A DNA stretch of 64,000 nucleotides from Glycera tridactyla (lineage: Eukaryota). This document shows, piece after piece, positions 1 through 62,993 of the stretch. The notes below the pieces were generated by a model. That model did not search any database and was not told where the DNA came from. It was given only the letters and a program-made list of their open reading frames with translations. The stretch is taken from contig OZ286471.1 of NCBI GenBank assembly GCA_965644265.1, positions 46,748,001 to 46,812,000 on the forward strand, read 5' to 3'. A program made the position numbers and the translations under genes. Position 1 is the first letter of the stretch. Every line of letters begins with the position of its first letter.

Positions 1-24
1 ATCATCTGTGGGGAAACTGCGAAG
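1..24 (+). CDS. Repeat exon E0 (3' end only)
   Basis: Reads (D)HLWGNCE then G|GTATGA donor; truncated by window edge. Confidence 0.85.
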
Positions 25-3000
25 GTATGACATTCAACATGTAGAAGTCAAATTGGGGAAATGAAGTTGATGAGTTCAATCCCAACCGCAAGAGTTCGGC
101 CTTATCCATTTTAGCCATTGTCTTTTTGTAGATCATTTGTGGAACTTTTGAAAATTTTGAGGCCAGTTTTCTCTTGAGCATCCTCTACCTTTATCTCTAT
201 TTCTTTAGAACAGGTATTCCTGATTCAGCCACAGTTTGTTTTGTTCTCTCACTTAGCAGCCTCTCTACATTTTGGCATCTTCTGACATATGACAAGCTTT
301 TATGATATTCTGAAGTATTGTGGATAGATACTTGTTTGGAAGCATGATCGGTGATGCTGCTTCCACAATTGTAGCGGTTGTCTGTGGTCAACCACGGCCA
401 ACCACAGCACCACCTCAGACTACTACTAGAGATGACTGCTGGATCCCTACTACTGGAGGATCTGCGGGCTCCTCTTCAGTGTGTATCTTCCCATTCAGCT
501 ACAGGAATGTCAGATATACAGGCTGTTCCACTGTCGATAATAGTGGCTACCCATGGTGTTACACCTCGTACAACTATGAAAATGATCATCTTTGGGGCAA
601 TTGCCAAGGTTAGTTGTGAATGAGACCTATCTTTCCGAGCCTCCCAAGTGAAAACTATACGTTTCTCTTGAATTGTGGTCTTGTGCCGAGGATTGAATTG
701 TTCAATCGTGAAAAGATATGTACTGTAAGTTCAGATTCTTTATCCAATCACCTAGGTTTATTTGCTTCGACTGATCCTGCATTATTGGTGAATGGGAAAC
801 AATCTTTTTCTCATATCATGAATCCGGCAGAGGCTCTGCATGCCTTATATTCTACCGAGATAGGTGTGTGGTATTCTGACTGATATTCGACCAATTTTCA
901 GCGATGGTATGTGGCCAGCCCCGGCCGACAACCCAGGCTCCTGGGACAACAACCGGTCGGGACTGCTTTATCCCGACTACAGGAGGGTCAGCTGGAGGGC
1001 AATCCGTATGCATCTTTCCTTTCTCCTACAAAGACAGGACTTATAGTGGCTGTTCCACAGAGGATAATGGTGGAATTGCATGGTGTTATACTTCATACAA
1101 TTACAGGAACGACCACTTGTGGGGAAATTGCGGAGGTATGACTAAACAGAGACCTACGTTTTTATATTGAACAGTAGACTCACATTTTTTGGATGATACT
1201 TTTGCTGGGAGTTGGTTTTTTTGAGTTGTATTTCAATCTCGATTGCATCTCCCGGTGGGCATAATATGAGTTGTCCCAGTTTGAAGATTGTGTGTTTTCT
1301 GAGTGCCCAAGTGAAATTCACAACTGTAAAGATTTTTGATATTGTCCATGAGAATTTGTTTTCGTTGATACGACATCAACCATGTTCTTTTTAAAAAGAT
1401 ACATGTAACGGGAACGGATCTTCAGTCTGGTTGATGTGGGTATTGAAGCATCTTTATGCCATTCGAATTTGAATCTAGAGAAACATTTGGATATTGTTTG
1501 AATGATGATTGTCATATCAGAAACTAATTTGTTTCCTCAGCATTGAGATGTGGTGAGCCACGTCCAACAACTCCGGCTGTCAGGTCCACTACCCGAGAAG
1601 GCTGTTGGTACTCCACCTATGGTGGTACAGCAGGCCAAGCATCTAGCTGCATATTTCCCTTCTCTTATAAGAATGAGTTGTATGTATCCTGCTCCACTGC
1701 GGACAATGGAAATGTTCCCTGGTGCTATACATCATACAACTACGCTGAGGACCATCTCTGGGGCAATTGCGGAGGTAGGTCTCTACCTTGCATATTGAAC
1801 AAATATGAGTGAAATTCAGTCCCAGATTAAGCATTGCACCCATGATCAGCTAACAGCAGCACCGGGCTGGAATCATATTTGTACATCAACAATCACATAG
1901 ATGCATTCAACTATCGTCGAGATCTTGTCGGAAGTCATGGTGACAGTAGTCATCGTGGTTATGATGGTTGTTGATGTGGCAACGACTATGATGGCAGGTG
2001 GCATCGGTACTGGCTGCGGCAGTGCCAGTGATGATGGTGGTGATCATATGATTGCTGTTGGTGATGGTGGTGTTGATAGTGCTGCTGTCGGTGATGGTGG
2101 TGGAGGTGTTGGTTATGGTGATGGTCGTAGCTGCAGCAACAGTGATGATGATGGTGTTGGTGGTGGTAGTAGGGTTTGGAATTGAAAGTGGTGACGATGG
2201 TTCTTGTGCCTGTAGTGATGGTGAAGATTGGGTGGTAGGAGTAAGAATTTTGATGACCACCATTATCTTGCGGTGAAGGCATTCGGGCAAGACATTTACG
2301 ATAAGGAAGGCGGTGAGCTAGATAAGCTAACGTACATGCCCTGACATTGCAGCACTGGTCTGTGACCGACCACGGCCGGTCACTACCGGTACTGAAACAA
2401 CCACTCGCCAAGATTGTTGGATACCAACAGTTGGTGGTACAGCTGGTCAGCCATCAGTCTGCATCTTCCCATTCTCCTACAAAGGCAAAGAATACACCAG
2501 CTGCACAACTGAAGATAACCGCAATTATCCCTGGTGTTATACCTCCTACAACTACCAGAATGATCACTTGTGGGGAAATTGTGGAGGTATGTTTACCATG
2601 CCAGCAATCTGAACAATGGATTATCTCTCCTATTCCGAAAACAATTACATTCACCCACTGTTAGAACCAATATTTTGATGTCCATGTATTCAATAAATTA
2701 AGCCTCCTATTGGTGACCCAGGAGAAGATGTTTCGGAATAATCTCACCCATGCCCCTGCAATGACAGTCGCAATATAGCAAAAGTGCTTCAGACTAGATG
2801 GAGAATACCCGAACACCCAAACAAAATAAATATTTTTTGGCATCCTTTCATTTAAGAATGAGGGACAGTCTTACAATTCGAAGGGTGTGCCCCATGTTAC
2901 ATATGGTACCGCCTGAGCATCTCGAGCACTGCACCTGCACAAATATTCCAATGAAAAGAAAAATGTTATGCATTAATACTCGGGTATCCATTGAAGACTG

Positions 3001-6000
3001 ATCAGTCCTGGCATTTTCTGGAGAAAAATATTTCCCAGAAACCTAGATTCATGTGGTTCTTAATGACCTTAACTCTTCCACGGAATGGTCACACAACTAA
3101 GCTCTCAAAGTTCACAAACTCCTACTCGAGGCACAATATGTGGTTCTGGATTGTTTCTTTAGTGACTAATCCATTCTGCAGTAACTTCTGTCTGAGTAGG
3201 GGCAGTCATGAAGAGAAGCGGTTGAACAGTTTATGGATGTTTTCAGAGTTAGTTTGTGGGGAGCCACGGCCAACAACTCAGCCAACGCTCTCAACGACTG
3301 CTGGCAACTGCTTCATTCCAACCACTGGAGGTTCAGCTGGCCAATCATCCGTCTGCATCTTCCCTTTCACCTACAAGAATGTAATCTATACAGGATGTTC
3401 CACTGTTGATAACAGCGGCAGGGCATGGTGTTACACCTCTTATAACTATGCCAATGATCATCTGTGGGGTAATTGTGGAGGTATGTTCAAAGGATTCCTC
3501 TTTGGATGCCACTAACCTTCGAGAGGTAGAAGCAAGTAATAGCATCTGTTCAGAGAGTATCCCACTCAGACCTGTGCTGAACATATCTCCTCAGTTTTCA
3601 AAGTCACCTTCCAGTACGAGGCCTCCCATTAACGTCATGTCTTTGCTCAAATATGTGTGCAGCCACTGCTGACAAATTGAATTATCAAGATTGGTTTGGG
3701 CTACGCACCCTATATCCATGGGCATTTCTTGGTTCACTCATGCAATAATAGTTGTCCTTATAGGTGTCCGAGAATGGTTGTTCATCCGAGCAGAATTTCA
3801 TCATCTTGCCCAATTTCAGCGTTGGTCTGCGACCAGGAGCGACCAACTACGGCAGCACAGATGACCACAACACGTGGAGATTGCTGGATTCCTACCTATG
3901 GGGGTACAGCAGGCCAGTCAGTGTGTATCTTCCCTTTCACTTACCGGGATCGATCTTACACTGGCTGCTCTACCGTGGATAATGGTGGCTACCCATGGTG
4001 CTATACATCTTATGACTATAGGAATGACCATATGTGGGGCAACTGTCAAGGTACGCCACTAGGAGTTATCAAGATTGTAGTGCTCATATTTCTATTTCAC
4101 TCATCAGATGAATGAGGATGTACAGAAGTTCTCTCTTCTCGATGATGATGATGTGTGACAATAAATACTCCATGTGAGATCGTTCACTTGCATGGTCTAC
4201 ATTTGGTTTGGATTGCAAGATAAGAATGCGCGAGAAGATATCGTTTTCAAGAGTTTCAGTTAGGACTCAATTCTTACTTGTGTCCACCTAATAGCCATAC
4301 GCATCGTGATCACTCAGAATTACTCACCTGTAACCATTCATATGATTGTAATCAGATTGACATACACAGAGCCATCATGATGTTTGTATTACCATGCATG
4401 ATGATTTTCAGGAATGGTATGTGGACAGCCTAGACCAACAACTCCAGCAACAGGCACTACGACCAGGCGAGACTGTTACATTCCAACTAGTGGTGGTTCA
4501 GCCGGGCAGGCCTCTGTCTGTGTTTTCCCTTTCACTTACCGCGGTGTGACTTACAGCGGCTGCTCGACAGTAGACAATAGTGGATATCCGTGGTGTTATA
4601 CATCTTACAATTATGAAAATGATCATCTCTGGGGCAATTGTCTGGGTAGGTCAACCAATTCATGTATGACAATTTCAAAAAAGATGGCAGATTGAAATGG
4701 TCTTCGAAACTATCTTCAACTATGCACATATATCATTTTTTGGTATGAATCTCTTTTGGGGTCGACAGTGCAAATATTTCATCCTCCCGATTAATGTTGC
4801 GTTCATCAATCACAAAGATCTCATTCACCTGTAAGACCTTTCTTGGAAGAATCTAATGAGTATCCCTACCAATATAGAAATTGGAGGATCTGCCTATCAC
4901 ACGTAGCAGTTCCGTCTATACCCCCAACACTAGTCACCAGCCAGATGTTGATAGGTTCTTGGCTATAAATAAAGAAGTGCATTTGATATGCAGTTGACTT
5001 TGGCTATGACTATGATACCGGGCCTGAAATGATCAAATTTGTATCCTTGTAGGAGAGCACGTGATATTTGGGTTATTTTATTCAGATTTGATATGTGGTG
5101 GTGACCGTCCGACCACTCAACCTACAAGATCGACGACAAACCGAGACTGTTACATCCCAACAACTGGCGGCACTGCGGGTGACTCAGTCTGTACCTTCCC
5201 ATTCACATACAGGAATGTACAGTATACAGGCTGCTCCACTGTCGACAATAGCGGCTACCCCTGGTGTTATACGTCGTACAACTATAGGAATGATCATCTG
5301 TGGGGAAACTGTGGAGGTTTGTCACCCTGTCTCTGCTCTACATGACAGGAAAGGAACTGGAGCACCCCTCACCACACCTGATGTTGTGGTGTAGATGGCA
5401 TTGAGCTGTTCAATCAATGTCATTTCTGGTCAGATGATCTTGACCTTATTCTGCTACATTCTGATGCTGGTTTCTTGATAATAACAAGCCTGTCTTTTGG
5501 CAACAAGCTTGGTACAGAAGCAATGAATCGGAAATTTGTTATCCGATATCCATACATTAAGATGGTTAGTCATCACATCCTTTCCAGTTGACATGTAGGT
5601 GGATGTTTCGATTTATTTGGATGTAGCATGGCCTGCATTACATTGTCTCTTAATTGTGCTTGTCTGATTAGGTCAGTGCTGATAAAAATATCACTTCTCA
5701 TTAAGGTATCCAGGCCCATGATCATCATAGCAGACATATACCTCTGTTTTACTCTGTCATGAGCAGGGCTTGACTTTTGAAGCAGAGGGCTCTCCCTAAT
5801 TCAGAGTGAGTTTACATCATCTCTGCTGATATTTGCAGCGCTGGTATGTGGTAGGGATCGTCCCACCACTGTACCACCATCCACCACCACAGACTACGAC
5901 TGCTGGGTGCCGACATATGCTGGGACTGCGGGTCAGTCCTCCTGCATATTCCCATTCACCTACAGGGGAAAAGAATACACAGGATGTACCCGTGTAGATA

Positions 6001-54000: not shown

Positions 54001-57000
54001 ATGAAGAATAAGAATTACATAGGGATGCCTAAATAAATTGGATTGTCATTTGTGGCCCGGATGAACTTCATTTGACGATGCTTCCAGTTGTGATGCATCA
54101 GTAAGACTCGGGTAGATAATTCTGCAGTGAGAGGCATCATGACCTTTCCTAATTCCAAGAGTTTTCATTTGTTTTTCTGGAGATTTTCATATTTGAATAT
54201 GTTCATTGGTAGGCAGGGTCTCCAAGGCACTGCCTGAAGGGGAATGAAAATTCACGTTCACATGACTGATGAAATTTCAAATAAGTCTGCTATGAGACTT
54301 CATCGAATCAGATAGATATTACCAGAAATCAACATATTTGTGACGGAAATAATTCATTTCTGGTGATCCTGTTTCAGCCTTGATTTGTGGTGAACCACGT
54401 CCCACAACAGGTTCTACCCTGACAACAACAGGGAGTGACTGTTTCATTCCTACCATTGGAGGCACTGCACAGCAGCCCTCAGTGTGTGTCTTTCCCTTTG
54501 AGTACAGAGGTGTTATTTACACTGGTTGTTCCAACGTTGACAATGGTGGTTATGCCTGGTGCTATACCTCCTATAATTACAAAGACGACCATCTTTGGGG
54601 CAATTGTCAAGGTATGTTTCATATGTCCGCTACCAACATCAAAACATTCTAGTAAGAGCCAAATTGTAGAATCTGCGGCATAATATATACTGCCCTGTAC
54701 ATGGCGAAATGCTTTTTGATCATGGCATAGATCTGGACTATGATTATCCGTACCTATTAAATGTTTGGGGCTATACAATCAGGTACACCTCGAGATATTT
54801 GTTCCTCACATGGTTGTGTGCTAGGCGGATTACACCTGCAAATGAAAAACTGAACCAGGAGTCCTTGTATGGAGTTAGCTGTTTGAAGTTCATTCTGAGC
54901 TTAGTTTGATATAATGACTACATTTTTCTTCTCAACAGCATGTACGCACATATTGGAACAGAAAAGATCATAGCAACTCTAGTGCGATTCATCACTTTCT
55001 TCGATGAACTCACGTTTACTCGAACTCTTGCAAATGGCTTCACGTTTTGCCTCCATTTTTGATTTCCCTCTTTTCATTCAGATAACTGACAATTGAGTTT
55101 CGCTCAGCAGAATAATACCAAGTGCTCGCTGTGCATAGAGTTGCCTCATGAAAAGTGAGGAGATGGAAGGGTATCTAGAGGGCTTCTGTGCTCTTCAGAT
55201 TTCGAGATTTAATATATCAACTGATGTATCTTGTTGACAGAGGTAGTTTGTGGTCAGGACCGACCAACTACAGCTTCTACATTGACGACGACTGGCAGCG
55301 ACTGCTGGATCCCCACTGTTGGGGGTACAGCACAACAGCGCTCTGTCTGCATTTTCCCGTTTTCGTACAGGGGTACGACCTACACAGGATGCTCCACAGT
55401 CGACAATGGAGGATATGCCTGGTGCTATACCTCATATGATTACAGGAATGACCACCTCTGGGGAAACTGTCAAGGTGTGTGTTGATCGCATCCCTGGCTT
55501 GTGCAAACCCAAATACCTGCATGTACATCTATCTAAACTATAATGAACCTTAGTTGTGTAAGCCAAATTTGTGTAGATCCTGCATGCCTAATCTTGTCTC
55601 CCGCTATTGTCTCCCAAACCATCGTCTCCCAAACCACTGCTCTGATGGTCGATGTTTCGAACTGGCTCTTAGAACCTTTTTTCAAGAAATTTGATTTAGG
55701 CTCTCGGGTACACTTAGTTCGTGTATTCAGGCAATTAGTTTCATGAGCAACCCATGCATATCTGTGCTGTGTCATTTCATCCTCTTATTCTCTGCCTGAA
55801 GTAGGATTACTTCTGGTTTGGGGCAGTCATGATACCCTTACCTTCATCTATTGTGAATACACTCTCATCACACTATTGATGATGGTATTCTGCAGACTGT
55901 CTTTCTTAGGCAGGCTTTCTCTCATTTCGATCCCCTATCTCGAAAATTAGTGAAGGTGTTGGTTGTTTTGAATTGCATGCACGTTATAGTTATGTCATAT
56001 ATCCCCGACCAGGTGTAAGAGACCTTGTGCAATACCTTGTCAATCAACTTGATAAAGTCTCAACTGAAGAAAAGTAACGCTTGGGTGATGAACATGTAGC
56101 TATACAGCAATATATTCATAGCTCTTTTCACAGAAACTGTATTTGATAAAGCGACCTCCTCGCTCACAGCCACACACTTATGAATTTACCTCATTCCTTA
56201 CCAACGAGTAGCCCCTCTATATCCAGCATTTCAGTGCTGACCCTACTCCAATCGTTTGGGAAAGTCTGAGAGAATTGAATTGAAATCATAAGAACTATAA
56301 TTTTTCCATGGAGTACAAAACACAAAAATGAATGATAATCACAATACAAAGATTGAAAGAGGATGAATGCAATGCTTAGAGGTATTCACAGGAAACATAT
56401 GATGGACGATATACTGTGTAATATGTCCGATAACATATGCAATATACAACTTGTTTTGTTACACCTTGGATCAATTGGTTCTCATTGAGTGAATTCTGTG
56501 TTGCAATTGATTCCGCTGCACATAGAATAGCCTTTCTTGCGGGCTACAGACACAGACACCCCTTTGGTTTTCTTGATTTGATATAGTCAAAAGGGAAAAA
56601 TGATGTACTAACCATAGATGTTTAATGACGATCATATTGAAATGTAGGTAAATTTCAGATCTGATGTATAGGTGACATTATTTGTCATGATTTGGATGGC
56701 GTGTTCCTATTACAGAGCTGGTGTGTGGGCAGCCTAGACCCACTACAATGGCCAGTGCAACCACATCAAATAGTGGATGTTGGATACCCACTGTTGGTGG
56801 AACGGCCATACAAAACTCTGTATGCATATTTCCCTTCGATTACAAAGGGGTTGCCTACAGTAGTTGCTCCACAGTGGACAATAGCAACTATGCCTGGTGT
56901 TATACCTCTTACAACTACAAGGAGGATCATCTATGGGGTAACTGCCAAGGTATGTGTCTCTAAGGGATGTTTTGCAAACAGGTGTGATTGGAACCAGTGC

Positions 57001-60000
57001 GGGTGCTCTCTATGATCTACTCAGATTCTCACTGCCTTATGCTCTATCCATGTGTATCATGTGAGATGTAGAAACTGATTATATGGCTGAAAATGAATCA
57101 TCCAAGTAATGTGGGCTTAGCGAGAGGAGCAGAGAGCACAATGCCTCAACACGAACCTCGAACAAACCCGGTATCTTTCATTGGGTAGCGATGATCCGCC
57201 AATGGTCACGGGCGATTGTTTGGCACGATGCAGGGATTCACTCAGCCCTGGGGATATGAGTTCCCAATCTCACCAATATTCCACATGATGATAGTTAATT
57301 CAAATCATACTTCCTACAGAGGAGTAATCAATTGTGCAGGCGCATTTGTGATGTCAGTCTTTACTGTCCGACAGACATGGTATGTGGGGAACCACGACCA
57401 ACGACTGCTTCGACATTGTCAACAACACGAAGTGACTGCTGGATCCCTACCACTGGTGGTACTGCGGGCTACCGTTCAGTCTGCACCTTCCCATTCAGCT
57501 ACAAAAATGTGGTTTACACTGGATGCTCCACCGTCGATAATAGCGGGAGGGCCTGGTGTTATACTTCATATGACTATGAGAATGATCATCTCTGGGGAAA
57601 TTGTGGAGGTATGTGTACACGCCTGTATGAAAATTACAGGATGTTGATCTGTGGAAAGTAGATTCATATTGATATGAAGTCCACAGTACTGAAGTTCTGC
57701 TGCTAACCAAATGGTGACCCCTAGCTGCCCAAATTCATGTGTATATCAAAAACTAGAAATGCATTTCTGCCTCAATCTGCCTCTTACAAAATCCTTCATT
57801 TGCTCAGCCAGCATTACAGAATGGAATTCTCCAAGTATGTATCATACAATCGGTCAAAATATTGTAGGCCAGCAGATTTTTTAATCTTGAAGAATCCGTC
57901 AAAAGATATTCGAAATGATATTATATTCCGTCGCACTGTGAGTGTACTCACTAGGTTTGACTGAACCTTGTTCTGTCCTTTCCTCAAACTAAATCACAAT
58001 CAGGGTAGGTCTTGTATCTTCAGTTCTGTAGTCTCTTTGATGAGGTGTGAATTGTCAGTGAAGGCTTATTGATGTATCAAATCTGTCTTGTAGCGCTTGT
58101 GTGTGGTGAGCCCCGGCCGACCACCCCGGCTACAGCTACAACCAGTAATAGGGACTGTTGGATCCCAACCATTGGGGGTACAGCCATCCAAAGATCAGTC
58201 TGTATCTTCCCATTCTCGTACAAGGATGTTGTCTACACTGGGTGCAGTGATGTCGATAATGGGGGTATCCCATGGTGTTACACCTCTTATGACTATAAAG
58301 ACGATCACCTGTGGGGAAACTGTGGAGGTATGTCCCTGAAATACGATGATAGATATTGATTGGGTGAAAGAAATGATTGAATTTCTATAGGTTAGAATAA
58401 TGCATTGGTGAACCATTTTGCCAACCCTGAGTGAGATTTTTCGGACAAGTGGCACTGAAAAATAGGTTTTACAGGATGTATGTACATTTATACATGTATT
58501 ATCTTCAATCGATACCCTGTCCTGTAAATTGAAACAAAGCTTGCTTCAGATTTCAGTTGAGCATTGAGCAGACTACAATTAGATACTTTGATAATACTGA
58601 TTACATTGATTCGCAGAGATGTTCTTCGTGATCCGTATATCTGTGTGCATCAAATATATATCTGGTACACAATGTCAGGACACTAATTCCACATAACTGA
58701 GCGAAATGTATGACAGAATCAATATAGCATCTTTTCTTTACTCGTCTATACGTTTCTCATATTTGGCACCTCATTGCACGTTGAGATTTTACGTATGGGA
58801 AGTTTGATCGTCTTTTGGCTTGATGATTCCTATCCTAAAAGATGGCGAATCCTTAGAGCTCGAACTTCAACCTGAAGGTTAAATAATCAGCCTGGTCTCG
58901 CTTTGCGATCTTCTATTTTACAGAGATAGTGTGTGGTGAACCACGCCCAACAACCGCATCCACCATGACGACCACTGCAAGTGACTGCTACATTCCTACG
59001 ATAGGTGGCACTGCAGGACAGCCATCTGTCTGCATTTTCCCTTTCAGCTACCGAGGTGTTGACTATACAGGATGCTCCACTGTGGATAACAGTGGATATC
59101 CTTGGTGTTATACCTCTTATGATTATCGAAATGACCATTTGTGGGGGAACTGTCAAGGTATGTCTTGATCCCATTATATCTACATCGTAGTCTTCGCCTC
59201 TAGTGATTGATGTATGCTGCAACATTCGATGCAATTCATCGAAGACTGACTCCTTCTGCTTCCCACCTCCTCCCTGTAGACAGATCCCTGACTTCACTAT
59301 CAGTATATTCTAAGAGAGGCATTGACACTGAGCTTTCCTTATGGGACATGATTGCCGGAAAGAATCGCTCGTCTAAGCCCCGCCTACTGTTTATCCGGCA
59401 TCGGTTGACCTCATGCATTAGATATTGCCAAGACCATTTGGCAGAGAATTAGCCTGGATCATGTAAGTATGCTTTGGAGTTGTCTCGTACCGAAATGTAG
59501 TTAATCACTTGTATTTGATGAATAATTTATATTCCATCTAGTGGCAGAATTTTTTGGAAAAATCCACTGATCTCCTACACCAGGTTCACACTCTCACGCC
59601 CTATGTATCATATTCAATACCTGTGACCATATCTCGCTTCCCTGTATTATTCCTTTTCCTAACCAGCCCAGAGTTGTAGTCTAACTATACATGGTCGTGA
59701 GTTCAGAACTAACCAGACATATGATCCTGATACTATGCTTCAATGTATTCATCACCGCTTCTTTTCCCTATTCACATATGAAGAAGCAAAGAGGTTCTGG
59801 TCTACCCTATCATCCTTTCCGATTTTTCACATGTGATGTGATACGTATCTCCTGAGAGCAGTGTTGATGTGCAAACTTCTTCTGCTAAGTTTAGATGCTT
59901 ATAGGTGGAGGTGCGCATATAGTTTGGTAAATTAATGAGTGCTGATGATATTGTGGAAAAGAGAAGAATAAGGAAAGTTCAGAGGAATAGGAGAAGAGAG

Positions 60001-62993
60001 ATATTCAGTGAGAGATAGNNNNNNNNNNNNNNNNNNNNNNNNNNNNNNNNNNNNNNNNNNNNNNNNNNNNNNNNNNNNNNNNNNNNNNNNNNNNNNNNNN
60101 NNNNNNNNNNNNNNNNNNNNNNNNNNNNNNNNNNNNNNNNNNNNNNNNNNNNNNNNNNNNNNNNNNNNNTTTTCGTACATGAGCGAGATGTATAAAGGGA
60201 CTGAGAAAGACAACCTCTAATTTTGATTCCTATCAAAGGAGTCAATCATTGCGATGATAACATGTGTTCTGATTGTCATTTCACTTTATCACAAATGCAG
60301 TGAACTTATCGAATATTCGCGATATGTGGGAATCTTATTTGGACAGACGAATCGCTAGCCGTATAATATGATGCAATCATACACTTATTTCCAGCTATGG
60401 TGTGTGGTCGAAACCGTCCACAGACTGTTGTGGCCCAGACAACAAGCAGCAGTAATTGCTGGGTGCCCACACTGGGTGGTACTGCGGGATCCCCATCTGT
60501 GTGTATCTTCCCCTTCTCTTACAAGGGCACGCTCTATGTTAGCTGTTCCAATGTGGATAACGGTGGTTATCCATGGTGTTATACATCATATGACTATGAG
60601 AATGATCATCTCTGGGGCAATTGCCAAGGTAACAGTGTGATTCTTAGTGTAGCCTCTCACACTAACATCTACTGTGAAACTAATTCAACCACATAGGATT
60701 AGATTAACAAATATATCCAACAGGTGCTTATTGTCGCACTCAGAATATATAACATAATGGATATAAATACTTATCCATTTCACGTTGGATTCTACTCACT
60801 AACGACGGACAGTGACTTATACTGGGCCAGCGAGAGTCCAGTCTAATCAATTCGACATGGATAATCGGTGACCTCCTAGTATATTAGGAATAGTTGAATT
60901 TGCATCCTCTCGGGCTTGAATTGCGCAATGGCTATGGCTTTCAACGATGTGCGGATCGTCTCATATTCAGGATGTTTGCTATAATATGAGATGAGTCATG
61001 GAGGTGTCCAGTGGAACAGAATTTCTTCATGTCATTGGTAGCACTGTTATTTCCTTGCCTTCAGATATGCTTGGCAGAGTGAATGGATGCATGTTACATA
61101 TACCAGAGTCACATATGAGAGAATATTGGAGTATTCATGTTTGTGACAATGAAGACTGTGGGCATTTGGTACTGACGTTAGCAGTTTGTGCTATTGCAGT
61201 CAATATATAGTTAAGTAGATGGCCGTACTGATATTCATGTCCTCACTGATTGTGAAGTTTGATATCATACTTGTAGCGATGGTGTGCGACCAGCCACGCC
61301 CTACCACCATCCCTGTCAAAACCACAACAGCTAGTGACTGTTGGATTCCAACAGTTGGTGGCACTGCTGGGCAGACATCCGTATGCATCTTCCCATTCTC
61401 CTATAAGGGTGTGACTTACACCGGATGTTCCACTGAGGATAATGGTGGTTACCCCTGGTGCTATACATCTTATAACTACAGAGATGATCACCTCTGGGGC
61501 AACTGTCAAGGTATGTCGCCATTCAGGAGGGATGAAACGCAGGGCAAGCTTGTCACTACATGTGGAATACTTGTCAGTACACGCTTCATACCGATATCGA
61601 TAAGATATCTGATACTGAATTAATCTCGAAAGAGACTAGCTAATATAGAATCATGGTACTTGGATACACCCTACATCAGCTCGTGGCAATCGTTTGTACA
61701 CACACCCATATTTCATATTCTTTGCGATTAAAATGCCTGAACAGGCTTGGCAGTTTGCTCTCATTCGAAACACTTTACTTTCAACTCCTCAGGAGGACAA
61801 CCATACCTTCATCACTTCCAGTGCAAGCATTCACAATACAGTACATGGATGCAAAGAACAAGGCGGACATGACAGCATACATTCAAGCATTTCCCTCATA
61901 GCAGTATTGTAGATCATCAAGAAATCCTCCATGCATCAGACGTTTGACACAGAATAATTATTTTGTGGTCAATTTTCATGTACTAAGCCGTAGCGACCGC
62001 ATCATAAGACCATAGAAATGCATGATGTGGGTTGTAATTCCCTGATGGCATGTTTACAGCAATGGTATGTGATCAGCCCCGTCCAACCACACAGGCACCT
62101 ATCACTACCACCAACAGTGACTGTTATATCCCAACATATGGTGGGACAGCTGGTAGCTCGATCTGTATTTTCCCATTCGAGTACAGAAATGTACGATACA
62201 CTGGCTGTTCGACGGTGGATAATGGCGAGATACCTTGGTGCTACACCTCAGTATATTATAATACTGACCATCTCTGGGGAAATTGTTATGGTATGTTCCA
62301 TCTGACTGAAACACTACAGAGAAATGCTGAGAAGCACTCACTGTCAATGGATAGTATATTTGTATCCTCCATCTGATCCCACATGGATTCCTTCATTGAT
62401 CTATATGAATATTGAGATGTGCGTCAGATGTCTATTTGATCAACTTCGCTCTACATGAGTGCTCAATTTCATACTGTTACATGGAGAGGAATCATTTGTT
62501 TATCACTAGAAATTAGGCATTCATATTTGATCTTGATATCATCTTTGATAAGGATGGCATTGTGTGTTTTCATTTTCCTCATTGGAAATATATACCAGCC
62601 CTAGGCTACAGGCAGGGCTAGCTAATACCAGGAGCACAATATACACCATTACTGGAAACACCAATACATTACTTTCAGTAATTTGGATCGCTTCATTGTC
62701 CATTGTCAATCACGCTTATGGCTTAGTGTAATCACAGTTTCATGCCAATATTGGGTATTTTCCAGAGGTCATATGTGATGGCAAACAGCCACGGACCTTT
62801 GGGACAACGACTGGTAGAGACTGTTGGGTACCAACTGTAGGGGGTACTGCAGGTGCTGCTTCTGTCTGCATCTTCCCTTTCTCATACCGTGACGTGCAAT
62901 ACACCAGTTGTAGTACTGTGGATAATGGTGGCTATCCTTGGTGTTATACTTCGTACAACTACAGAGAAGACCATCTCTGGGGCAACTGCCAAG
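1..62993 (+). CDS. Internal portion of a giant multi-exon gene encoding at least 82 tandem FN2/kringle-like modules with Thr-rich linkers (probably secreted/extracellular; 5' and 3' ends outside window)
   Basis: 81 complete exons plus 1 partial exon, all with AG/GT at equivalent positions, all phase 1-1, lengths divisible by 3, no in-frame stops. Conserved FN2 signature CxFPFxY...YxxC...WC...WxxC in every unit. A single constitutively spliced product is inferred, not observed. Confidence 0.85.
375..608 (+). CDS. Repeat exon E1 (FN2/kringle-like module)
   Basis: AG..GT, 234 bp; begins AVVCGQPRPTTAPPQTTTRDDCW. Confidence 0.92.
902..1135 (+). CDS. Repeat exon E2
   Basis: AG..GT, 234 bp; AMVCGQPRPTTQAPGTTTGRDCF. 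Confidence 0.92.
1541..1774 (+). CDS. Repeat exon E3
   Basis: AG..GT, 234 bp; ALRCGEPRPTTPAVRSTTREGCWYS (divergent). Confidence 0.92.
1938..2240. repeat. Cryptic (GAT/GGT)n trinucleotide low-complexity tract in intron E3-E4
   Basis: Runs such as gatgatggtggtgat and ggtgatggtggtgttgat; source of spurious His- and Thr-rich antisense ORFs. Confidence 0.8.
2353..2586 (+). CDS. Repeat exon E4
   Basis: AG..GT, 234 bp; ALVCDRPRPVTTGTETTTRQDCW (correct frame missing from ORF track; translated by hand, open). Confidence 0.92.
3247..3480 (+). CDS. Repeat exon E5
   Basis: AG..GT, 234 bp; ELVCGEPRPTTQPTLSTTAGNCF. Confidence 0.92.
3820..4050 (+). CDS. Repeat exon E6
   Basis: AG..GT, 231 bp; ALVCDQERPTTAAQMTTTRGDCW. 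Confidence 0.92.
4412..4645 (+). CDS. Repeat exon E7
   Basis: AG..GT, 234 bp; GMVCGQPRPTTPATGTTTRRDCY. Confidence 0.92.
5086..5316 (+). CDS. Repeat exon E8
   Basis: AG..GT, 231 bp; DLICGGDRPTTQPTRSTTNRDCY. Confidence 0.92.
5839..6069 (+). CDS. Repeat exon E9
   Basis: AG..GT, 231 bp; ALVCGRDRPTTVPPSTTTDYDCW. Confidence 0.92.
6575..6800. repeat. (CA)n / (CATC, CATT)n low-complexity tract
   Basis: cacactcacacacatgcac, ccatccatc, cattcattcatcattca. Confidence 0.6.
7004..7234 (+). CDS. Repeat exon E10
   Basis: AG..GT, 231 bp; DVVCGVPRPEREGLGTTTNSRCW. Confidence 0.92.
8421..8651 (+). CDS. Repeat exon E11
   Basis: AG..GT, 231 bp; DLVCDEQRPTTAPLVTTTGRDCW. Confidence 0.92.
9624..9854 (+). CDS. 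Repeat exon E12
   Basis: AG..GT, 231 bp; ELVCDQPRPTTEPTKTTTGADCF. Confidence 0.92.
9900..10085. repeat. (GT)n / (GATT, GAGT)n low-complexity tract
   Basis: gtgggtgtgtgtgg, gattgattgattgat, gagtgagtgtg. Confidence 0.6.
10269..10499 (+). CDS. Repeat exon E13
   Basis: AG..GT, 231 bp; GLICGRDRPTTASTLQTTDRDCW. Confidence 0.92.
10777..10956 (+). mobile_element. Dispersed 180-bp repeat, copy 1 (SINE-like 3' end with (CAAA)n tail)
   Basis: Colinear similarity to 26423-26602 (tctgaact, acttcca.ttgacaa, cagggtt.gtga, gtctgcag, tgaccag, ggcatac, tgggttgata, caaacaaacaaaac). Confidence 0.65.
11074..11304 (+). CDS. Repeat exon E14
   Basis: AG..GT, 231 bp; ALVCGEPRPTTHLPGTTTRDDCY. Confidence 0.92.
12864..13097 (+). 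CDS. Repeat exon E15
   Basis: AG..GT, 234 bp; ELVCGRPRPTTSAPQTTTLGDCW. Confidence 0.92.
   Translation, partial: NWYVVVLDQPPQLHRQPLWVIVGFRHLVAQPDRPLCVHCPSATGVWSIQDAHRSIMEAYPGVTHPTTMKATICGETV
13570..13803 (+). CDS. Repeat exon E16
   Basis: AG..GT, 234 bp; DVVCGEPRPTTASTLTTTPRDCY (hand-translated, open). Confidence 0.92.
14208..14441 (+). CDS. Repeat exon E17
   Basis: AG..GT, 234 bp; ELICGQARPTTASTVATTGSDCW. Confidence 0.92.
14968..15201 (+). CDS. Repeat exon E18
   Basis: AG..GT, 234 bp; ALVCGLPRPTTAATMTTTGRDCW; ends C|GTAAGT. Confidence 0.9.
15489..15719 (+). CDS. Repeat exon E19
   Basis: AG..GT, 231 bp; xMVCGQPRPTTASTLTTTPNDCW. Confidence 0.92.
16048..16281 (+). CDS. Repeat exon E20
   Basis: AG..GT, 234 bp; ALVCGQPRPITQPTGTTTSNNCW. 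Confidence 0.92.
16510..16560. repeat. (TA)n(GT)n microsatellite
   Basis: tatatatatacgtgtgtgtgagtctgtgtctgcgtgtgtgtg. Confidence 0.7.
16640..16873 (+). CDS. Repeat exon E21
   Basis: AG..GT, 234 bp; DLVCGEPRPTTAVTMTTTGRDCF. Confidence 0.92.
17310..17388. mobile_element. Short internally deleted MITE (TA-CAGT terminus, Tc1/mariner-pogo-like)
   Basis: Left end tacagtcaaatctgcctatagaggcca, right end ggtggtctctcgatcaggttcgact; both ends match 29374-29534 in inverted orientation. Confidence 0.55.
17481..17711 (+). CDS. Repeat exon E22
   Basis: AG..GT, 231 bp; ALVCGRQRPTTSGIPRTIGTDCF. Confidence 0.92.
18061..18291 (+). CDS. Repeat exon E23
   Basis: AG..GT, 231 bp; EEVCNEPRPTTPASATTTGSDCW. Confidence 0.92.
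18629..18862 (+). CDS. Repeat exon E24
   Basis: AG..GT, 234 bp; EMVCGEPRPTTLSTMTTTQGDCF. Confidence 0.92.
18916..19199 (+). repeat. Local direct tandem duplication in intron E24-E25 (about 132 bp + 148 bp copies)
   Basis: Both copies share aatgtggt...ttaatgcaaccaactgattga, tttgcttctttgatggggcgcctaa and gacctcaaactgcagttttcttgagatattcgtcat. Confidence 0.9.
19464..19697 (+). CDS. Repeat exon E25
   Basis: AG..GT, 234 bp; ALICGQPRPTTASVLTTTGGECW. Confidence 0.92.
20299..20532 (+). CDS. Repeat exon E26
   Basis: AG..GT, 234 bp; VLVCDEPRPVTRSGSTTTSSDCW. Confidence 0.92.
20973..21206 (+). CDS. Repeat exon E27
   Basis: AG..GT, 234 bp; DLVCGEPRPTTGSTLSTTPSDCF. Confidence 0.92.
21560..21793 (+). CDS. 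Repeat exon E28
   Basis: AG..GT, 234 bp; ELICGRDRPTTASTLSTTGRDCW. Confidence 0.92.
22297..22530 (+). CDS. Repeat exon E29
   Basis: AG..GT, 234 bp; ALVCDEPRPSTASTLSTTDSDCW. Confidence 0.92.
22769..23002 (+). CDS. Repeat exon E30
   Basis: AG..GT, 234 bp; ELVCGEPRPTTASTLTTTPGDCY. Confidence 0.92.
23169..24429. mobile_element. About 1.26 kb non-autonomous DNA transposon with long degenerate TIRs
   Basis: TA|agggtccggg ... cctgggccct|TA ends; exact inverted 12-mer gacgtcagctca (23354-23365) / tgagctgacgtc (24254-24265); further inverted matches (tgagaaaa, cca.tattc); sits in the longest intron. Confidence 0.55.
24588..24818 (+). CDS. Repeat exon E31
   Basis: AG..GT, 231 bp; ALVCGGQRPTTASTLTTTGRDCW. 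Confidence 0.92.
25227..25457 (+). CDS. Repeat exon E32
   Basis: AG..GT, 231 bp; AMVCGEPRPTTASTLSTTASNCW. Confidence 0.92.
25855..26088 (+). CDS. Repeat exon E33
   Basis: AG..GT, 234 bp; ELVCDQPRPITREIKTTTPDDCY. Confidence 0.92.
26423..26602 (+). mobile_element. Dispersed 180-bp repeat, copy 2 (SINE-like)
   Basis: Colinear similarity to 10777-10956 including the (CAAA)n tail. Confidence 0.65.
26790..27020 (+). CDS. Repeat exon E34
   Basis: AG..GT, 231 bp; ELVCGRERPTTMSTLTTTPDNCY. Confidence 0.92.
27359..27592 (+). CDS. Repeat exon E35
   Basis: AG..GT, 234 bp; ELVCGGDRPTTASTQTTTPGDCW (hand-translated, open). Confidence 0.92.
27959..28192 (+). CDS. Repeat exon E36
   Basis: AG..GT, 234 bp; GLVCGRARPSTASTLTTTQNNCW. 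Confidence 0.92.
28557..28790 (+). CDS. Repeat exon E37
   Basis: AG..GT, 234 bp; ALVCDEPRPTTSAPMTTTQADCW. Confidence 0.92.
28850..29112 (+). mobile_element. DINE-1/HINE-like (Helentron-associated) non-autonomous element
   Basis: Starts tttatacccc; 5' hairpin acccccgtccaaa/tttggaagggggt (28857-28887, 12/13 match); then GGTT/GTCY-type microsatellite ending tctgtccg. Family call rests on architecture only. Confidence 0.5.
29374..29534. mobile_element. About 160-bp MITE, same family as 17310-17388
   Basis: Left end gtcaaacctgctcgagagaccatct matches the reverse complement of 17361-17385; right end ggtggcctttatagacaggtgggctata. Confidence 0.55.
29876..30109 (+). CDS. Repeat exon E38
   Basis: AG..GT, 234 bp; ALVCGEPRPTTMSTLTTTGSDCW. 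Confidence 0.92.
30343..30576 (+). CDS. Repeat exon E39
   Basis: AG..GT, 234 bp; ALVCGEPRPTTASTLTTTGRDCW. Confidence 0.92.
30888..31121 (+). CDS. Repeat exon E40
   Basis: AG..GT, 234 bp; AMICGEARPTTMSTLTTTEGNCW. Confidence 0.92.
31476..31709 (+). CDS. Repeat exon E41
   Basis: AG..GT, 234 bp; EIICDEPRRVTSSTLTTTPADCY. Confidence 0.92.
32101..32334 (+). CDS. Repeat exon E42
   Basis: AG..GT, 234 bp; GMVCGRARPTTASTLTTTPSDCW. Confidence 0.92.
32919..33152 (+). CDS. Repeat exon E43
   Basis: AG..GT, 234 bp; ELVCGEPRPTTMSSLTTTQADCW. Confidence 0.92.
33642..33875 (+). CDS. Repeat exon E44
   Basis: AG..GT, 234 bp; AIVCGKDRPTTASTLSTTPDDCW. Confidence 0.92.
34336..34569 (+). CDS. Repeat exon E45
   Basis: AG..GT, 234 bp; ALVCGQPRPTTASTLTTTASDCY. 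Confidence 0.92.
34964..35197 (+). CDS. Repeat exon E46
   Basis: AG..GT, 234 bp; ELTCGRNRPTTASTLTTTGSNCW. Confidence 0.92.
35501..35734 (+). CDS. Repeat exon E47
   Basis: AG..GT, 234 bp; AMVCDAPRPITEKPMTTTARDCW. Confidence 0.92.
36672..36905 (+). CDS. Repeat exon E48
   Basis: AG..GT, 234 bp; DLVCGEPRPTTASTLTTTGSDCW. Confidence 0.92.
37312..37545 (+). CDS. Repeat exon E49
   Basis: AG..GT, 234 bp; AMVCGEPRPTTASVQTTTGSDCW. Confidence 0.92.
38219..38452 (+). CDS. Repeat exon E50
   Basis: AG..GT, 234 bp; EMVCGQARPTTMSTLSTTGSDCW. Confidence 0.92.
39138..39371 (+). CDS. Repeat exon E51
   Basis: AG..GT, 234 bp; ELVCGEPRPTTGSTLTTTPSGCW. Confidence 0.92.
39747..39980 (+). CDS. Repeat exon E52
   Basis: AG..GT, 234 bp; EMVCGRARPSTASTLSTTADDCW. 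Confidence 0.92.
40372..40605 (+). CDS. Repeat exon E53
   Basis: AG..GT, 234 bp; ALVCGEPRPTTGSTLSTTPRDCW. Confidence 0.92.
40959..41192 (+). CDS. Repeat exon E54
   Basis: AG..GT, 234 bp; ALVCGEPRPTTASTLTTTGSDCW. Confidence 0.92.
41509..41742 (+). CDS. Repeat exon E55
   Basis: AG..GT, 234 bp; ELVCGQPRPTTGSTLTTTGSDCW. Confidence 0.92.
42187..42420 (+). CDS. Repeat exon E56
   Basis: AG..GT, 234 bp; GLVCGKNRPTTESTLSTTAEDCW. Confidence 0.92.
42670..42903 (+). CDS. Repeat exon E57
   Basis: AG..GT, 234 bp; VLVCGEPRPTTAATKTTTGSDCW; only unit with DRLW instead of DH(L/I/M)W. Confidence 0.92.
43000..43100. repeat. ACAG-based tandem repeat with 12-bp period (acagtcaaatag)
   Basis: acagtcaaatagacag repeated; reads as QTDSQIDS in the intronic read-through ORF. 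Confidence 0.85.
43193..43426 (+). CDS. Repeat exon E58
   Basis: AG..GT, 234 bp; GLVCGEPRPTTMSTLTTTGSDCW. Confidence 0.92.
43845..44078 (+). CDS. Repeat exon E59
   Basis: AG..GT, 234 bp; EMVCGEPRPTTGSTLTTTPNDCW. Confidence 0.92.
44534..44767 (+). CDS. Repeat exon E60
   Basis: AG..GT, 234 bp; DLVCGEPRPTTATTETTTPGNCY. Confidence 0.92.
45118..45351 (+). CDS. Repeat exon E61
   Basis: AG..GT, 234 bp; VMVCNKQRPTTASTLTTTGSDCY. Confidence 0.92.
45761..45994 (+). CDS. Repeat exon E62
   Basis: AG..GT, 234 bp; GLVCGGDRPTTASTLTTTGQDCW. Confidence 0.92.
46368..46601 (+). CDS. Repeat exon E63
   Basis: AG..GT, 234 bp; ELVCGEPRPTTGSTLTTTGRNCW. Confidence 0.92.
46921..47154 (+). CDS. Repeat exon E64
   Basis: AG..GT, 234 bp; AMVCGEPRPITVTPQTTTPDDCW. 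Confidence 0.92.
47657..47890 (+). CDS. Repeat exon E65
   Basis: AG..GT, 234 bp; AMVCGQPRPTTAPTGTTTGSDCW. Confidence 0.92.
48237..48470 (+). CDS. Repeat exon E66
   Basis: AG..GT, 234 bp; ALVCGQPRPTTASTLTTTGSQCF. Confidence 0.92.
49289..49522 (+). CDS. Repeat exon E67
   Basis: AG..GT, 234 bp; ELTCGRERPTTASTLTTTARDCW. Confidence 0.92.
49895..49915. repeat. Poly-C tract
   Basis: ccccccacccccccccccccc. Confidence 0.9.
50616..50849 (+). CDS. Repeat exon E68
   Basis: AG..GT, 234 bp; DLVCGEPRPTTMSTAATTASDCW. Confidence 0.92.
51938..52171 (+). CDS. Repeat exon E69
   Basis: AG..GT, 234 bp; DLVCGRERPTTMSTLTTTPSDCF. Confidence 0.92.
52979..53212 (+). CDS. Repeat exon E70
   Basis: AG..GT, 234 bp; AMVCGQPRPTTDATETTTGSDCW. 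Confidence 0.92.
53668..53901 (+). CDS. Repeat exon E71
   Basis: AG..GT, 234 bp; ELVCGQPRPTTASSVSTTAGNCW. Confidence 0.92.
54378..54611 (+). CDS. Repeat exon E72
   Basis: AG..GT, 234 bp; ALICGEPRPTTGSTLTTTGSDCF. Confidence 0.92.
55241..55474 (+). CDS. Repeat exon E73
   Basis: AG..GT, 234 bp; EVVCGQDRPTTASTLTTTGSDCW. Confidence 0.92.
56716..56949 (+). CDS. Repeat exon E74
   Basis: AG..GT, 234 bp; ELVCGQPRPTTMASATTSNSGCW. Confidence 0.92.
57375..57608 (+). CDS. Repeat exon E75
   Basis: AG..GT, 234 bp; DMVCGEPRPTTASTLSTTRSDCW. Confidence 0.92.
58094..58327 (+). CDS. Repeat exon E76
   Basis: AG..GT, 234 bp; ALVCGEPRPTTPATATTSNRDCW. Confidence 0.92.
58924..59157 (+). CDS. Repeat exon E77
   Basis: AG..GT, 234 bp; EIVCGEPRPTTASTMTTTASDCY. 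Confidence 0.92.
60019..60169. other. Assembly gap (151 N)
   Basis: Run of N in intron E77-E78, preceded by an AG-rich low-complexity flank. Confidence 0.98.
60395..60628 (+). CDS. Repeat exon E78
   Basis: AG..GT, 234 bp; AMVCGRNRPQTVVAQTTSSSNCW. Confidence 0.92.
61277..61510 (+). CDS. Repeat exon E79
   Basis: AG..GT, 234 bp; AMVCDQPRPTTIPVKTTTASDCW. Confidence 0.92.
62060..62290 (+). CDS. Repeat exon E80
   Basis: AG..GT, 231 bp; AMVCDQPRPTTQAPITTTNSDCY. Confidence 0.92.
62766..62993 (+). CDS. Repeat exon E81 (linker 2 aa shorter)
   Basis: AG..GT, 228 bp; EVICDGKQPRTFGTTTGRDCWVPTVGG...DHLWGNCQ; + strand frame absent from ORF track, hand-translated, open. Confidence 0.9.

What the first reader, a model, noticed from the sequence alone, without database searches (positions are those of the whole stretch)
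1..62993. Giant one-exon-one-module array: at least 82 intact FN2-like units in a single gene
Seen: 81 complete exons plus 1 partial exon of 228-234 bp, all AG/GT, phase 1-1, same strand, with no stop or frameshift. The total is about 18.9 kb CDS, about 6,300 aa and 486 Cys, and the array runs off the 5' edge. Known: FN2 modules in fibronectin and MMP-2/MMP-9 are phase 1-1 single-exon modules, but characterised proteins carry few of them (fibronectin 2, MMP-2/9 3, ELSPBP1 4). Inference: this is an extreme FN2 expansion giving a very large multivalent extracellular protein (mucus, matrix, adhesive or recognition role). I know of no described protein like it, but I cannot run a search.
Basis: partly seen in the sequence, partly recalled or inferred. 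Interest (0 to 1): 0.92.

Follow-up and report, generated by a model that had tools for sequence, protein, structure and literature searches.

The report
Giant 82-module FN2 repeat gene
This 63-kb stretch, from what is probably a worm genome, is the middle of one transcribed gene in which each of 82 exons encodes a collagen-binding-type (FN2) module, about four times more than any protein found in a 1.8-billion-protein library, so it probably makes a huge, undescribed extracellular matrix or mucus protein.

Summary
The + strand carries one partial exon (1-24) and 81 complete exons (228-234 nt). All have AG/GT borders and phase 1-1, and none has a stop. Spliced, they give 6,308 aa (about 694 kDa, pI 4.7, 487 Cys).

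Every unit tested is a Pfam fn2 domain, and the model folds like solved FN2 modules. Each exon also encodes a Thr/Pro tether of fixed length (17 residues) and two extra Cys.

RNA contigs from four runs in two studies join ten consecutive exons through nine introns, exactly at the predicted sites, with no depth in the introns. The units are ancient: synonymous sites are saturated, dN/dS is about 0.12, and no decayed exons remain. Single units have one-to-one counterparts in another assembly.

The N gap (60019-60169) lies inside an intron. It cannot break the frame, but it could hide exons.

A profile search of 1.84 billion representative proteins found at most 21 FN2 stretches per protein, none in a characterised protein.

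Function is inferred: a secreted, O-glycosylated, multivalent binder of collagen or another polymer.

The array runs off both window edges. Unchecked first-stage notes report FN2 arrays in neighbouring windows, ending in PAN/Apple modules, and on another piece of this genome.

Verdict: real, a new variant of a known kind, interest 0.7.

The parts
1..24 (+). 3' end of a partial FN2 exon (encodes ..HLWGNCE plus 1 base), donor GT at 25-26
   Evidence: Sequence read; frame continuity shown.
375..62993 (+). Array of 81 complete one-module exons, all AG/GT and phase 1-1, 228-234 nt
   Evidence: list printed. Exons: 375-608 902-1135 1541-1774 2353-2586 3247-3480 3820-4050 4412-4645 5086-5316 5839-6069 7004-7234 8421-8651 9624-9854 10269-10499 11074-11304 12864-13097 13570-13803 14208-14441 14968-15201 15489-15719 16048-16281 16640-16873 17481-17711 18061-18291 18629-18862 19464-19697 20299-20532 20973-21206 21560-21793 22297-22530 22769-23002 24588-24818 25227-25457 25855-26088 26790-27020 27359-27592 27959-28192 28557-28790 29876-30109 30343-30576 30888-31121 31476-31709 32101-32334 32919-33152 33642-33875 34336-34569 34964-35197 35501-35734 36672-36905 37312-37545 38219-38452 39138-39371 39747-39980 40372-40605 40959-41192 41509-41742 42187-42420 42670-42903 43193-43426 43845-44078 44534-44767 45118-45351 45761-45994 46368-46601 46921-47154 47657-47890 48237-48470 49289-49522 50616-50849 51938-52171 52979-53212 53668-53901 54378-54611 55241-55474 56716-56949 57375-57608 58094-58327 58924-59157 60395-60628 61277-61510 62060-62290 62766-62993
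375..608 (+). Representative unit: extra Cys (Ca), 17-residue Pro/Thr tether, extra Cys (Cb), then the FN2 core with its 4 Cys
   Evidence: Pfam fn2 E 5e-13; PDB matches; AlphaFold2 model pLDDT 75 with an FN2 fold.
29876..35734 (+). Ten consecutive exons joined through nine introns, exactly at the predicted borders, in RNA contigs
   Evidence: GT..AG joints at 30109|30343, 30576|30888, 31121|31476, 31709|32101, 32334|32919, 33152|33642, 33875|34336, 34569|34964 and 35197|35501. One 2,869-nt contig runs through exons 30343-35734 in order. Intron depth is 0.
27359..45994 (+). Units 35-62: two-exon (A/B) higher-order repeat
   Evidence: Identity is 0.739 at even lags and 0.702 at odd lags, reached by 0 of 2,000 permutations. 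The residue after the last core Cys alternates G/Q.
59158..60394 (+). Intron that contains the assembly gap
   Evidence: both flanks of the gap look non-coding and no exon abuts it.
60019..60169 (.). Assembly gap (N), left unfilled
33642..33875 (+). Unit 44, which has a one-to-one counterpart in another assembly (locus L001)
   Evidence: 92% aa identity to unit 44 against 83% to the next-best unit; exon nt identity 80%; the introns do not align.
62994..64000 (+). Start of the next intron after an open phase-1 donor (CAAG|GTTGGT); no further exon before the window ends

Best explanation
The window is an internal part of one very large, transcribed gene.

Each symmetric (phase 1-1) exon encodes one unit of 76-78 residues. 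A unit consists of a Cys (Ca), a 17-residue acidic Thr/Pro tether (consensus G-x-P-R-P-T-T ... T-T-T), a second extra Cys (Cb), and a canonical FN2 domain with its two disulfides and its aromatic ligand pocket.

Serial splicing yields a beads-on-a-string polypeptide with at least 82 FN2 modules here (6,308 aa, about 0.7 MDa, pI 4.7).

Inferred: it is secreted, the tethers are O-glycosylated, and Cb of one module pairs with Ca of the next exon (C-x4-C after the last core Cys). That would be a kringle-like third disulfide clamping each module.

Inferred function: a multivalent, regularly spaced binder and cross-linker of a polymeric extracellular ligand. Collagen is the most likely ligand (cuticle or matrix collagen), as for the FN2 modules of fibronectin, MMP-2 and MMP-9. 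The protein would act as a scaffold in matrix, cuticle, mucus or tube.
For: Shown:
- Exon anatomy and the open frame.
- FN2 identity by Pfam, PDB sequence search and predicted fold.
- Spliced RNA joining ten consecutive exons in runs from two studies, with zero intron depth. The same RNA runs also hold words from window 1-10000.
- Purifying selection on every unit. Amino-acid identity is about 70%, but third-codon-position identity is 0.42, median pS is 0.79, and dN/dS is about 0.12. The highest nt identity between two units is 76%.
- No dead exons and no homology between introns.
- One-to-one counterparts of single units in other assemblies: P0002 to unit 44 (92% vs 83% for the next-best unit), P0001 to unit 25 (91% vs 80.5%), P0006 to unit 10 (85.5% vs 73.7%).
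- Invariant Cys spacing and invariant aromatic residues Y42, Y47, W60, Y62, Y67 and W73.
- Tether composition: 31% Thr and 13% Pro.

For the clamp:
- C-x4-C occurs at 81 of 81 junctions.
- In the salmon-louse protein P0068, the first FN2 follows a Cys-free mucin region yet carries Cb, followed by C-x3-C.

The collagen-binding role of FN2 is established knowledge, also stated in PMC6211748.
Against: - No signal peptide, start, stop or other domain lies in the window, so secretion and the gene's limits are not shown.
- Splicing was tested on only 6 of 63 kb. RNA word share at the 5' end (0.15 against an exon fraction of 0.28) is lower than in the middle (0.30 against 0.39).
- The ligand is untested. 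FN2 modules of seminal BSP proteins bind choline lipids rather than collagen.
- The fixed 17-residue distance between Ca and Cb would also fit a Ca-Cb loop inside the tether instead of the clamp.
- Tissue of expression is unknown.
- The organism was not identified here.
Confidence: 0.75

Rival explanations
1. Splice-diversity array. Every exon is symmetric, so any subset could be included. The locus would then produce many shorter isoforms of variable length rather than one giant protein.
For: All exons are phase 1-1. Nine exons have tandem acceptors 6 nt apart. A few contig joints skip or go back several exons.
Against: Every joint at a true exon border links neighbouring exons, in all runs. 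The odd joints lie inside exons at conserved motifs, with 18-33 nt on the shorter side, as expected from assembler cross-overs between paralogous exons. Each exon is individually conserved.
Confidence: 0.12
2. Polyprotein precursor. The chain is cut in each tether, at the conserved G-x-P-R-P-T-T motif, and releases many single FN2 peptides of about 78 residues.
For: R7 and P8 are present in 80 of 81 tethers, and the tether length is fixed. That is unusually strict for a passive linker.
Against: There are no dibasic sites. Pro directly after the Arg disfavours trypsin-like and furin-like cleavage (general knowledge). If Cb pairs with the next exon's Ca, cleavage in the tether would still release clamped modules, so the sequence does not exclude this reading. 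There is no direct evidence for it.
Confidence: 0.07
3. A cluster of several adjacent FN2 genes, or a partly non-functional exon array, rather than one gene.
For: Gene ends were not seen. The gap at 60019-60169 and some long introns (up to 1,585 nt) were not covered by RNA evidence.
Against: No first or terminal exons, stops or decayed exons were found. All exons share one strand and one phase. dN/dS is about 0.12. Serial splicing is seen wherever it was tested.
Confidence: 0.05

Closest known systems
Gelatin-binding FN2 modules of fibronectin (2 modules) and of MMP-2 and MMP-9 (3 modules)
   Same: Same Pfam family, same fold (rmsd 1.5-2.2 A, TM 0.7-0.8 to isolated modules), same two disulfides and aromatic pocket, and one phase 1-1 exon per module.
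   Different: At least 82 modules instead of 2-3. Each has two extra Cys and a fixed Thr/Pro tether. The core motif is WCYTS and an invariant Asp-His precedes the last Trp. No catalytic, FN1 or FN3 partner domains lie in the window.
Seminal plasma BSP/PDC-109 and ELSPBP1 (2-4 FN2 modules)
   Same: Proteins made almost only of FN2 modules; PDC-109 matches at E 2e-12.
   Different: They are small (about 100-220 aa), bind choline phospholipids, and have neither the tethers nor the extra Cys.
Apolipoprotein(a) kringle IV array
   Same: A long tandem array of a small disulfide-knotted module of the kringle/FN2 superfamily, joined by short glycosylated linkers. The C-x4-C after the penultimate Cys is as in kringles (from memory, not tested here).
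   Different: In apo(a) the repeats are recent, nearly identical and vary in copy number. Here the units are ancient (synonymous sites saturated) and individually conserved. The Pfam Kringle model does not match.
Uncharacterised multi-FN2 predicted proteins: Sardina XP_062381919 (17 FN2), Branchiostoma KAI8499649 (18), Palaemon and Macrobrachium (16), and a eukprot transcript, P0045 (21 profile stretches)
   Same: Tandem FN2 arrays; they were the top hits of the profile search.
   Different: Four or more times fewer modules. Most lack the Ca/Cb pair and the fixed tether. None has been characterised.
Mucin-plus-FN2 and FN2-plus-PAN proteins: Lepeophtheirus XP_040577333 (P0068) and the marine metatranscriptome proteins P0060, P0124 and P0013
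   Same: FN2 modules with an extra Cys before the core and another 3-4 residues after it, separated by Thr-rich spacers. P0060 has a signal peptide, then 6 FN2 and 4 PAN domains by Pfam. This matches the FN2-then-PAN end reported, unchecked, for this locus.
   Different: 6-7 modules only, variable spacers, and all uncharacterised.

Membership tests
Fibronectin type II domain (Pfam PF00040) | Match to the family HMM above the curated cut-off | tested here: met
   46-55 bits against a cut-off of 22.2, over the full profile (1-42 of 42), on all 7 units tested. The other units are 59-80% identical to the first.
Fibronectin type II domain (Pfam PF00040) | Four Cys with conserved spacing, forming the 1-3 and 2-4 disulfides | tested here: met
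   The spacing C-x13-C-x10-C-x14-C is invariant in 81 of 81 units. The pairing itself is inferred from the family.
Fibronectin type II domain (Pfam PF00040) | Conserved aromatic cluster that forms the ligand pocket | tested here: met
   F38, F40, Y42, Y47, W60, Y62, Y67 and W73 are invariant or present in at least 96% of units.
Fibronectin type II domain (Pfam PF00040) | FN2 three-dimensional fold | tested here: met
   AlphaFold2 with the 81-unit alignment gives pLDDT 75. The top 50 Foldseek PDB matches are all FN2 modules, with TM 0.72-0.79 by target for isolated modules.
Fibronectin type II domain (Pfam PF00040) | Binding of gelatin or collagen (or choline lipids) | not testable with these tools
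   Needs a binding assay with recombinant modules.
Kringle (Pfam PF00051) | Match to the Kringle HMM and fold | tested here: not met
   No Kringle hit at E up to 1 on 7 units. No kringle appears among the top 50 structural matches.
Kringle (Pfam PF00051) | Third disulfide (Cys1-Cys6) clamping the N and C ends, with C-x4-C at the C end | tested here: inconclusive
   C-x4-C is present at 81 of 81 exon junctions, and a Cys lies 13-14 residues before the first core Cys. The pairing was not determined. The two-module model failed (pLDDT 32), and the tool gives no coordinates.
Gel-forming or classical mucins | Long, variable Pro/Thr/Ser domains, with VWD/CysD/CK domains for gel-forming mucins | tested here: not met
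   The tethers are only 17 residues and of fixed length (80 of 81). Pfam found no domain other than fn2 on the 7 units scanned, and all 81 units align with 59-80% identity.

The most novel reading that the evidence does not exclude
The window may be the middle of a single gene of about 400 kb. Both ends of the window are open splice phases (shown here).

Unchecked first-stage notes report at least 43 and at least 66 FN2 exons in the two windows upstream. They report at least 48, at least 47 and 26 FN2 exons downstream, the last group followed by 17 PAN/Apple modules.

If all of these are one transcript, the protein would carry more than 300 FN2 modules and 25,000-30,000 residues. That would rival titin as the largest animal protein. 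It would be an extracellular ruler or cross-linker with strictly periodic binding sites.
Probability: 0.35. Interest if true: 0.88.

Novelty: new variant of a known kind. Interest (0 to 1): 0.7.

Why it matters
- **FN2 outside chordates.** FN2 is treated as a low-copy module "largely confined to chordates" (Hynes 2012, PMC3308698). Here a non-chordate-looking genome has expanded it to at least 82 copies in one transcript, and has kept every copy intact after synonymous sites saturated.
- **A periodic multivalent binder.** The fixed spacing of the modules suggests binding to a periodic ligand. If the genome is an annelid's, the giant cuticle collagen is an obvious candidate. That would give a molecular handle on how the cuticle or tube matrix is assembled.
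- **The FN2-kringle link.** The extra Cys pair offers a natural intermediate for the proposed evolutionary link between FN2 and kringle.
- **Annotation.** Genes like this are missing from annotation. No such protein appeared in 1.84 billion representatives, so the largest extracellular proteins of invertebrates may be systematically overlooked.

Tried and rejected
- **Two-module fold.** AlphaFold2 on the two-module relative P0082:15-173 without an alignment failed (pLDDT 32). No spliced two-unit sequence of the window can be given by reference, so the disulfide topology could not be modelled.
- **Kringle membership.** Rejected.
- **Pseudo-exons.** None in the introns.
- **Intron homology.** Only one 186-bp hit, between introns 14 and 34.
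- **Structured RNAs.** No Rfam family reached its gathering score.
- **Other genes.** ORFs of 110 aa or more are exon read-throughs or low-complexity sequence.
- **Tandem repeats.** Tandem Repeats Finder sees no array, because the units are too diverged and are separated by unrelated introns.
- **Literature.** Word-start searches for "fibronectin type II" also matched "type III". The exact phrase "fibronectin type II domain" together with "annelid" gave 2 irrelevant papers. No paper describing a giant FN2 protein was found.
- **Organism.** The run names are coded. The accession search only showed that P0060 comes from a Pacific seawater metatranscriptome. "Annelid" rests solely on an unchecked first-stage note.
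- **ESM Atlas.** It added only generic FN2 clusters.

Full report
**1. What is in the sequence**

A protein-motif scan found FN2-like cores only on the + strand: 79 with a strict pattern and none on the - strand. A looser scan added two units whose last motif reads WSNC instead of WGNC.

Delimiting each unit gave 81 complete exons. Each has an AG acceptor in phase 1 and a GT donor in phase 1. The donor consensus is AAG|GTATGT.

Nine exons have two acceptors 6 nt apart. Using the upstream one restores the junction spacing seen everywhere else. Exon lengths are then 234 nt (65 exons), 231 nt (15) and 228 nt (1).

The window opens inside an exon (1-24, donor at 25-26). The last exon (62766-62993) ends in an open donor followed by 1 kb of intron. 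The array therefore leaves the window on both sides.

Spliced in order, the exons give 18,927 nt = 6,308 aa without a stop. The product has 487 Cys, 14% Thr, mass 694 kDa and pI 4.7. Introns are 233-1,585 nt, median 440.

**2. The assembly gap**

N 60019-60169 lies inside the intron between exons 58924-59157 and 60395-60628. The letters on both sides look like ordinary intron, and no exon abuts the gap.

Because every exon is phase 1-1, the reading frame is the same whether the gap hides zero, one or more exons. The count of 82 is therefore a minimum. 

**3. What each unit is**

- Seven units spread over the array all match Pfam fn2 over the full profile (46-55 bits, cut-off 22.2). The only other hit is the short CPA1 leader-peptide family, weakly, on two units.
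- The best solved relatives by sequence are the FN2 modules of MMP-9, MMP-2, fibronectin and PDC-109.
- An AlphaFold2 model built on the alignment of all 81 units (A1) has pLDDT 75. The tether is poorly ordered (pLDDT 49 for residues 11-20).
- Its 50 best PDB matches are all FN2 modules: rmsd 1.5-2.9 A, and TM 0.72-0.79 relative to isolated modules. No kringle appears.

The Cys spacing is extraordinarily regular:

| Interval | Spacing | Units |
|---|---|---|
| Last core Cys to Ca, across the splice junction | 4 residues | 81 of 81 |
| Ca to Cb | 17 residues | 80 of 81 |
| Cb to first core Cys | 13 or 14 residues | all |
| Core | C-x13-C-x10-C-x14-C | invariant |

The aromatic residues that form the FN2 ligand pocket are invariant or nearly so. 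These are Y42, Y47, W60, Y62, Y67 and W73, together with the FPF motif.

The tether is 31% Thr and 13% Pro, with R7, P8, T10, T16 and T17 almost invariant.

**4. It is transcribed and spliced as predicted**

Three RNA-type runs from one study hold 23-30% of the sampled words of 30000-36000, where exons make up 39% of the stretch. Two runs from another study hold 11-15%.

Laid on 30000-35999, their contigs show nine GT..AG joints exactly at my predicted borders, and each joint links neighbouring exons. One contig of 2,869 nt runs through the exons from 30343 to 35734 in order and continues beyond the stretch. Intron depth is zero except over one short high-copy repeat.

In the run from the second study, contigs on exons 32101 and 34336 carry loose ends that read like the conserved 3' end of an FN2 exon (..WGNC..). 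I take this as spliced RNA from the upstream exon, but I did not match the letters to a particular exon.

The few joints that skip or go back several exons lie inside exons at conserved motifs, with only 18-33 nt on the shorter side. I read them as assembler cross-overs between paralogous exons.

The same RNA runs also hold 7-15% of the words of 1-10000, where the exon fraction is 28%. The 5' part is therefore expressed too, though less completely assembled.

**5. The units are old and each is kept by selection**

- Amino-acid identity between units is about 70%. Nucleotide identity has a median of 66% and a maximum of 76%.
- Third-codon-position identity is 0.42 and median pS is 0.79, which is saturated. 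For the pairs where dS can be computed, dN/dS is about 0.12.
- Introns share no homology, apart from one 186-bp piece.
- There are no decayed exons.
- Units 35-62 keep a trace of growth by two-exon blocks. Identity is 0.739 at even lags and 0.702 at odd lags, a difference reached by 0 of 2,000 permutations.

Single-exon fragments from other assemblies are each distinctly closest to one unit here:

| Fragment | Closest unit | Identity | Next-best unit |
|---|---|---|---|
| P0002 | 44 | 92% | 83% |
| P0001 | 25 | 91% | 80.5% |
| P0006 | 10 | 85.5% | 73.7% |
| P0005 | 64 | 84% | 79% |

The contig carrying P0002 (L001, from GCA_013332675.1) holds two consecutive exons. The second is the unit-44 counterpart (80% nt identity). 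The first resembles units 39 and 43. The intron between them does not align.

So the array, with the individuality of its units, predates the split from at least one other species. The divergence between units also makes an assembly artefact very unlikely.

**6. Mechanism (inferred)**

An FN2 domain with disulfides and Thr/Pro tethers points to a secreted, O-glycosylated protein. The intact pocket in every module points to multivalent binding. The known FN2 ligands are denatured and native collagens (fibronectin, MMP-2, MMP-9, Endo180, the mannose receptor) and choline lipids (BSP proteins).

The fixed tether length implies regularly spaced sites, as would suit a periodic polymer. I therefore favour a matrix, cuticle or mucus scaffold that cross-links collagen. 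I put roughly 0.4 on collagen specifically, and 0.75 on the overall "giant secreted multivalent FN2 scaffold" reading.

The two extra Cys most likely form a kringle-like clamp, with Cb of a module paired to Ca encoded by the next exon. Three points favour this:
- the invariant C-x4-C at every junction;
- the position of Cb before the N-terminal strand of the module;
- the salmon-louse protein P0068, whose first FN2 follows a Cys-free mucin region yet has Cb, followed by C-x3-C.

A Ca-Cb loop within the tether is not excluded.

**7. Comparison with what is known**

A profile of the 81 units was searched against 1.84 billion representative proteins. It found 3,004 FN2 proteins. The highest number of matched stretches among the best 150 is 21 (a eukprot transcript). 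Next come 18 (Branchiostoma), 17 (Sardina) and 16 (two shrimps). All are labelled uncharacterised or hypothetical.

A smaller protein with a signal peptide, 6 FN2 and 4 PAN domains exists in a Pacific seawater metatranscriptome (P0060). Its only similar relatives are also environmental and unnamed.

I found no paper describing a giant FN2 protein or an annelid FN2 array. Hynes 2012 (PMC3308698) regards FN2 as largely confined to chordates.

**8. Context from the scan (unchecked)**

First-stage notes treat this genome as an annelid's. They report FN2 exon arrays in the windows from about 117 kb upstream to about 309 kb downstream, the last ending in 17 PAN/Apple modules, and a further array on another piece of the genome.

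I could not read those windows. If they are all one gene, the protein would be titin-sized. This is given as the novel case, not as a finding.

**9. Verdict**

It is a new variant of a known kind: a known domain at an unprecedented copy number, with an added Cys pair and fixed tethers. Function is inferred only.

Noticed in passing
window 375-62993 (spliced product): The 6,308 residues contain no N-glycosylation sequon (N-x-S/T). Shuffling alignment columns predicts 5.9 +/- 1.7, and 0 of 2,000 shuffles reached 0. Composition alone predicts 66 +/- 7. Asn at unit position 44 (12 units) is never followed two residues later by Thr, although 31 units have Thr there. This may be avoidance of N-glycans, or shared descent of unit subtypes.
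   Followed up: partly
window 27359-45994: Two-exon (A/B) higher-order repeat in units 35-62. The residue after the last core Cys alternates G/Q, and identity is higher at even lags (0.739 vs 0.702). The pattern is weak or absent in units 1-34.
   Followed up: yes
window 3247/3253, 9624/9630, 27959/27965, 39138/39144, 44534/44540, 46368/46374, 55241/55247, 58924/58930: Tandem acceptors 6 nt apart (..cagNNNtag| type) at nine exons, including 46368. Using the downstream one would delete two residues and shorten the invariant C-x4-C to C-x2-C. None of these lies in the RNA-tested stretch.
   Followed up: partly
window 32400-32600: A short piece of intron has RNA-contig depth of 40-207, against 2-9 for the exons, with many different loose ends. 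It is probably a high-copy mobile-element fragment expressed from elsewhere in the genome. It has no Rfam match.
   Followed up: partly
window 1900-2300: Low-complexity GGT/GAT-rich intron segment. It has a 30-nt tandem repeat at 2032-2102 and open reading frames of 127-141 aa on the - strand. It looks like simple sequence rather than a gene.
   Followed up: no
window 10500-11073 and 26089-26789: Introns 14 and 34 share 186 bp at 72% identity. This is the only intron-to-intron similarity in the array and is probably a shared repeat insertion.
   Followed up: no
all units, alignment A1 positions 70-71 and 61-64: Asp70 is invariant and His71 is present in 80 of 81 units, just before the last Trp. 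The core motif is WCYTS (kringle-like WCYT) rather than the vertebrate FN2 motifs WCATT or WCSTT. A conserved His next to the pocket could make binding depend on pH or metal.
   Followed up: no
L002 (GCA_013332675.1 contig, 268-789): In another assembly, two units of the same type (P0082, with a C-x4-C junction) are encoded without an intron between them, so the one-exon-one-module rule does not hold everywhere.
   Followed up: no
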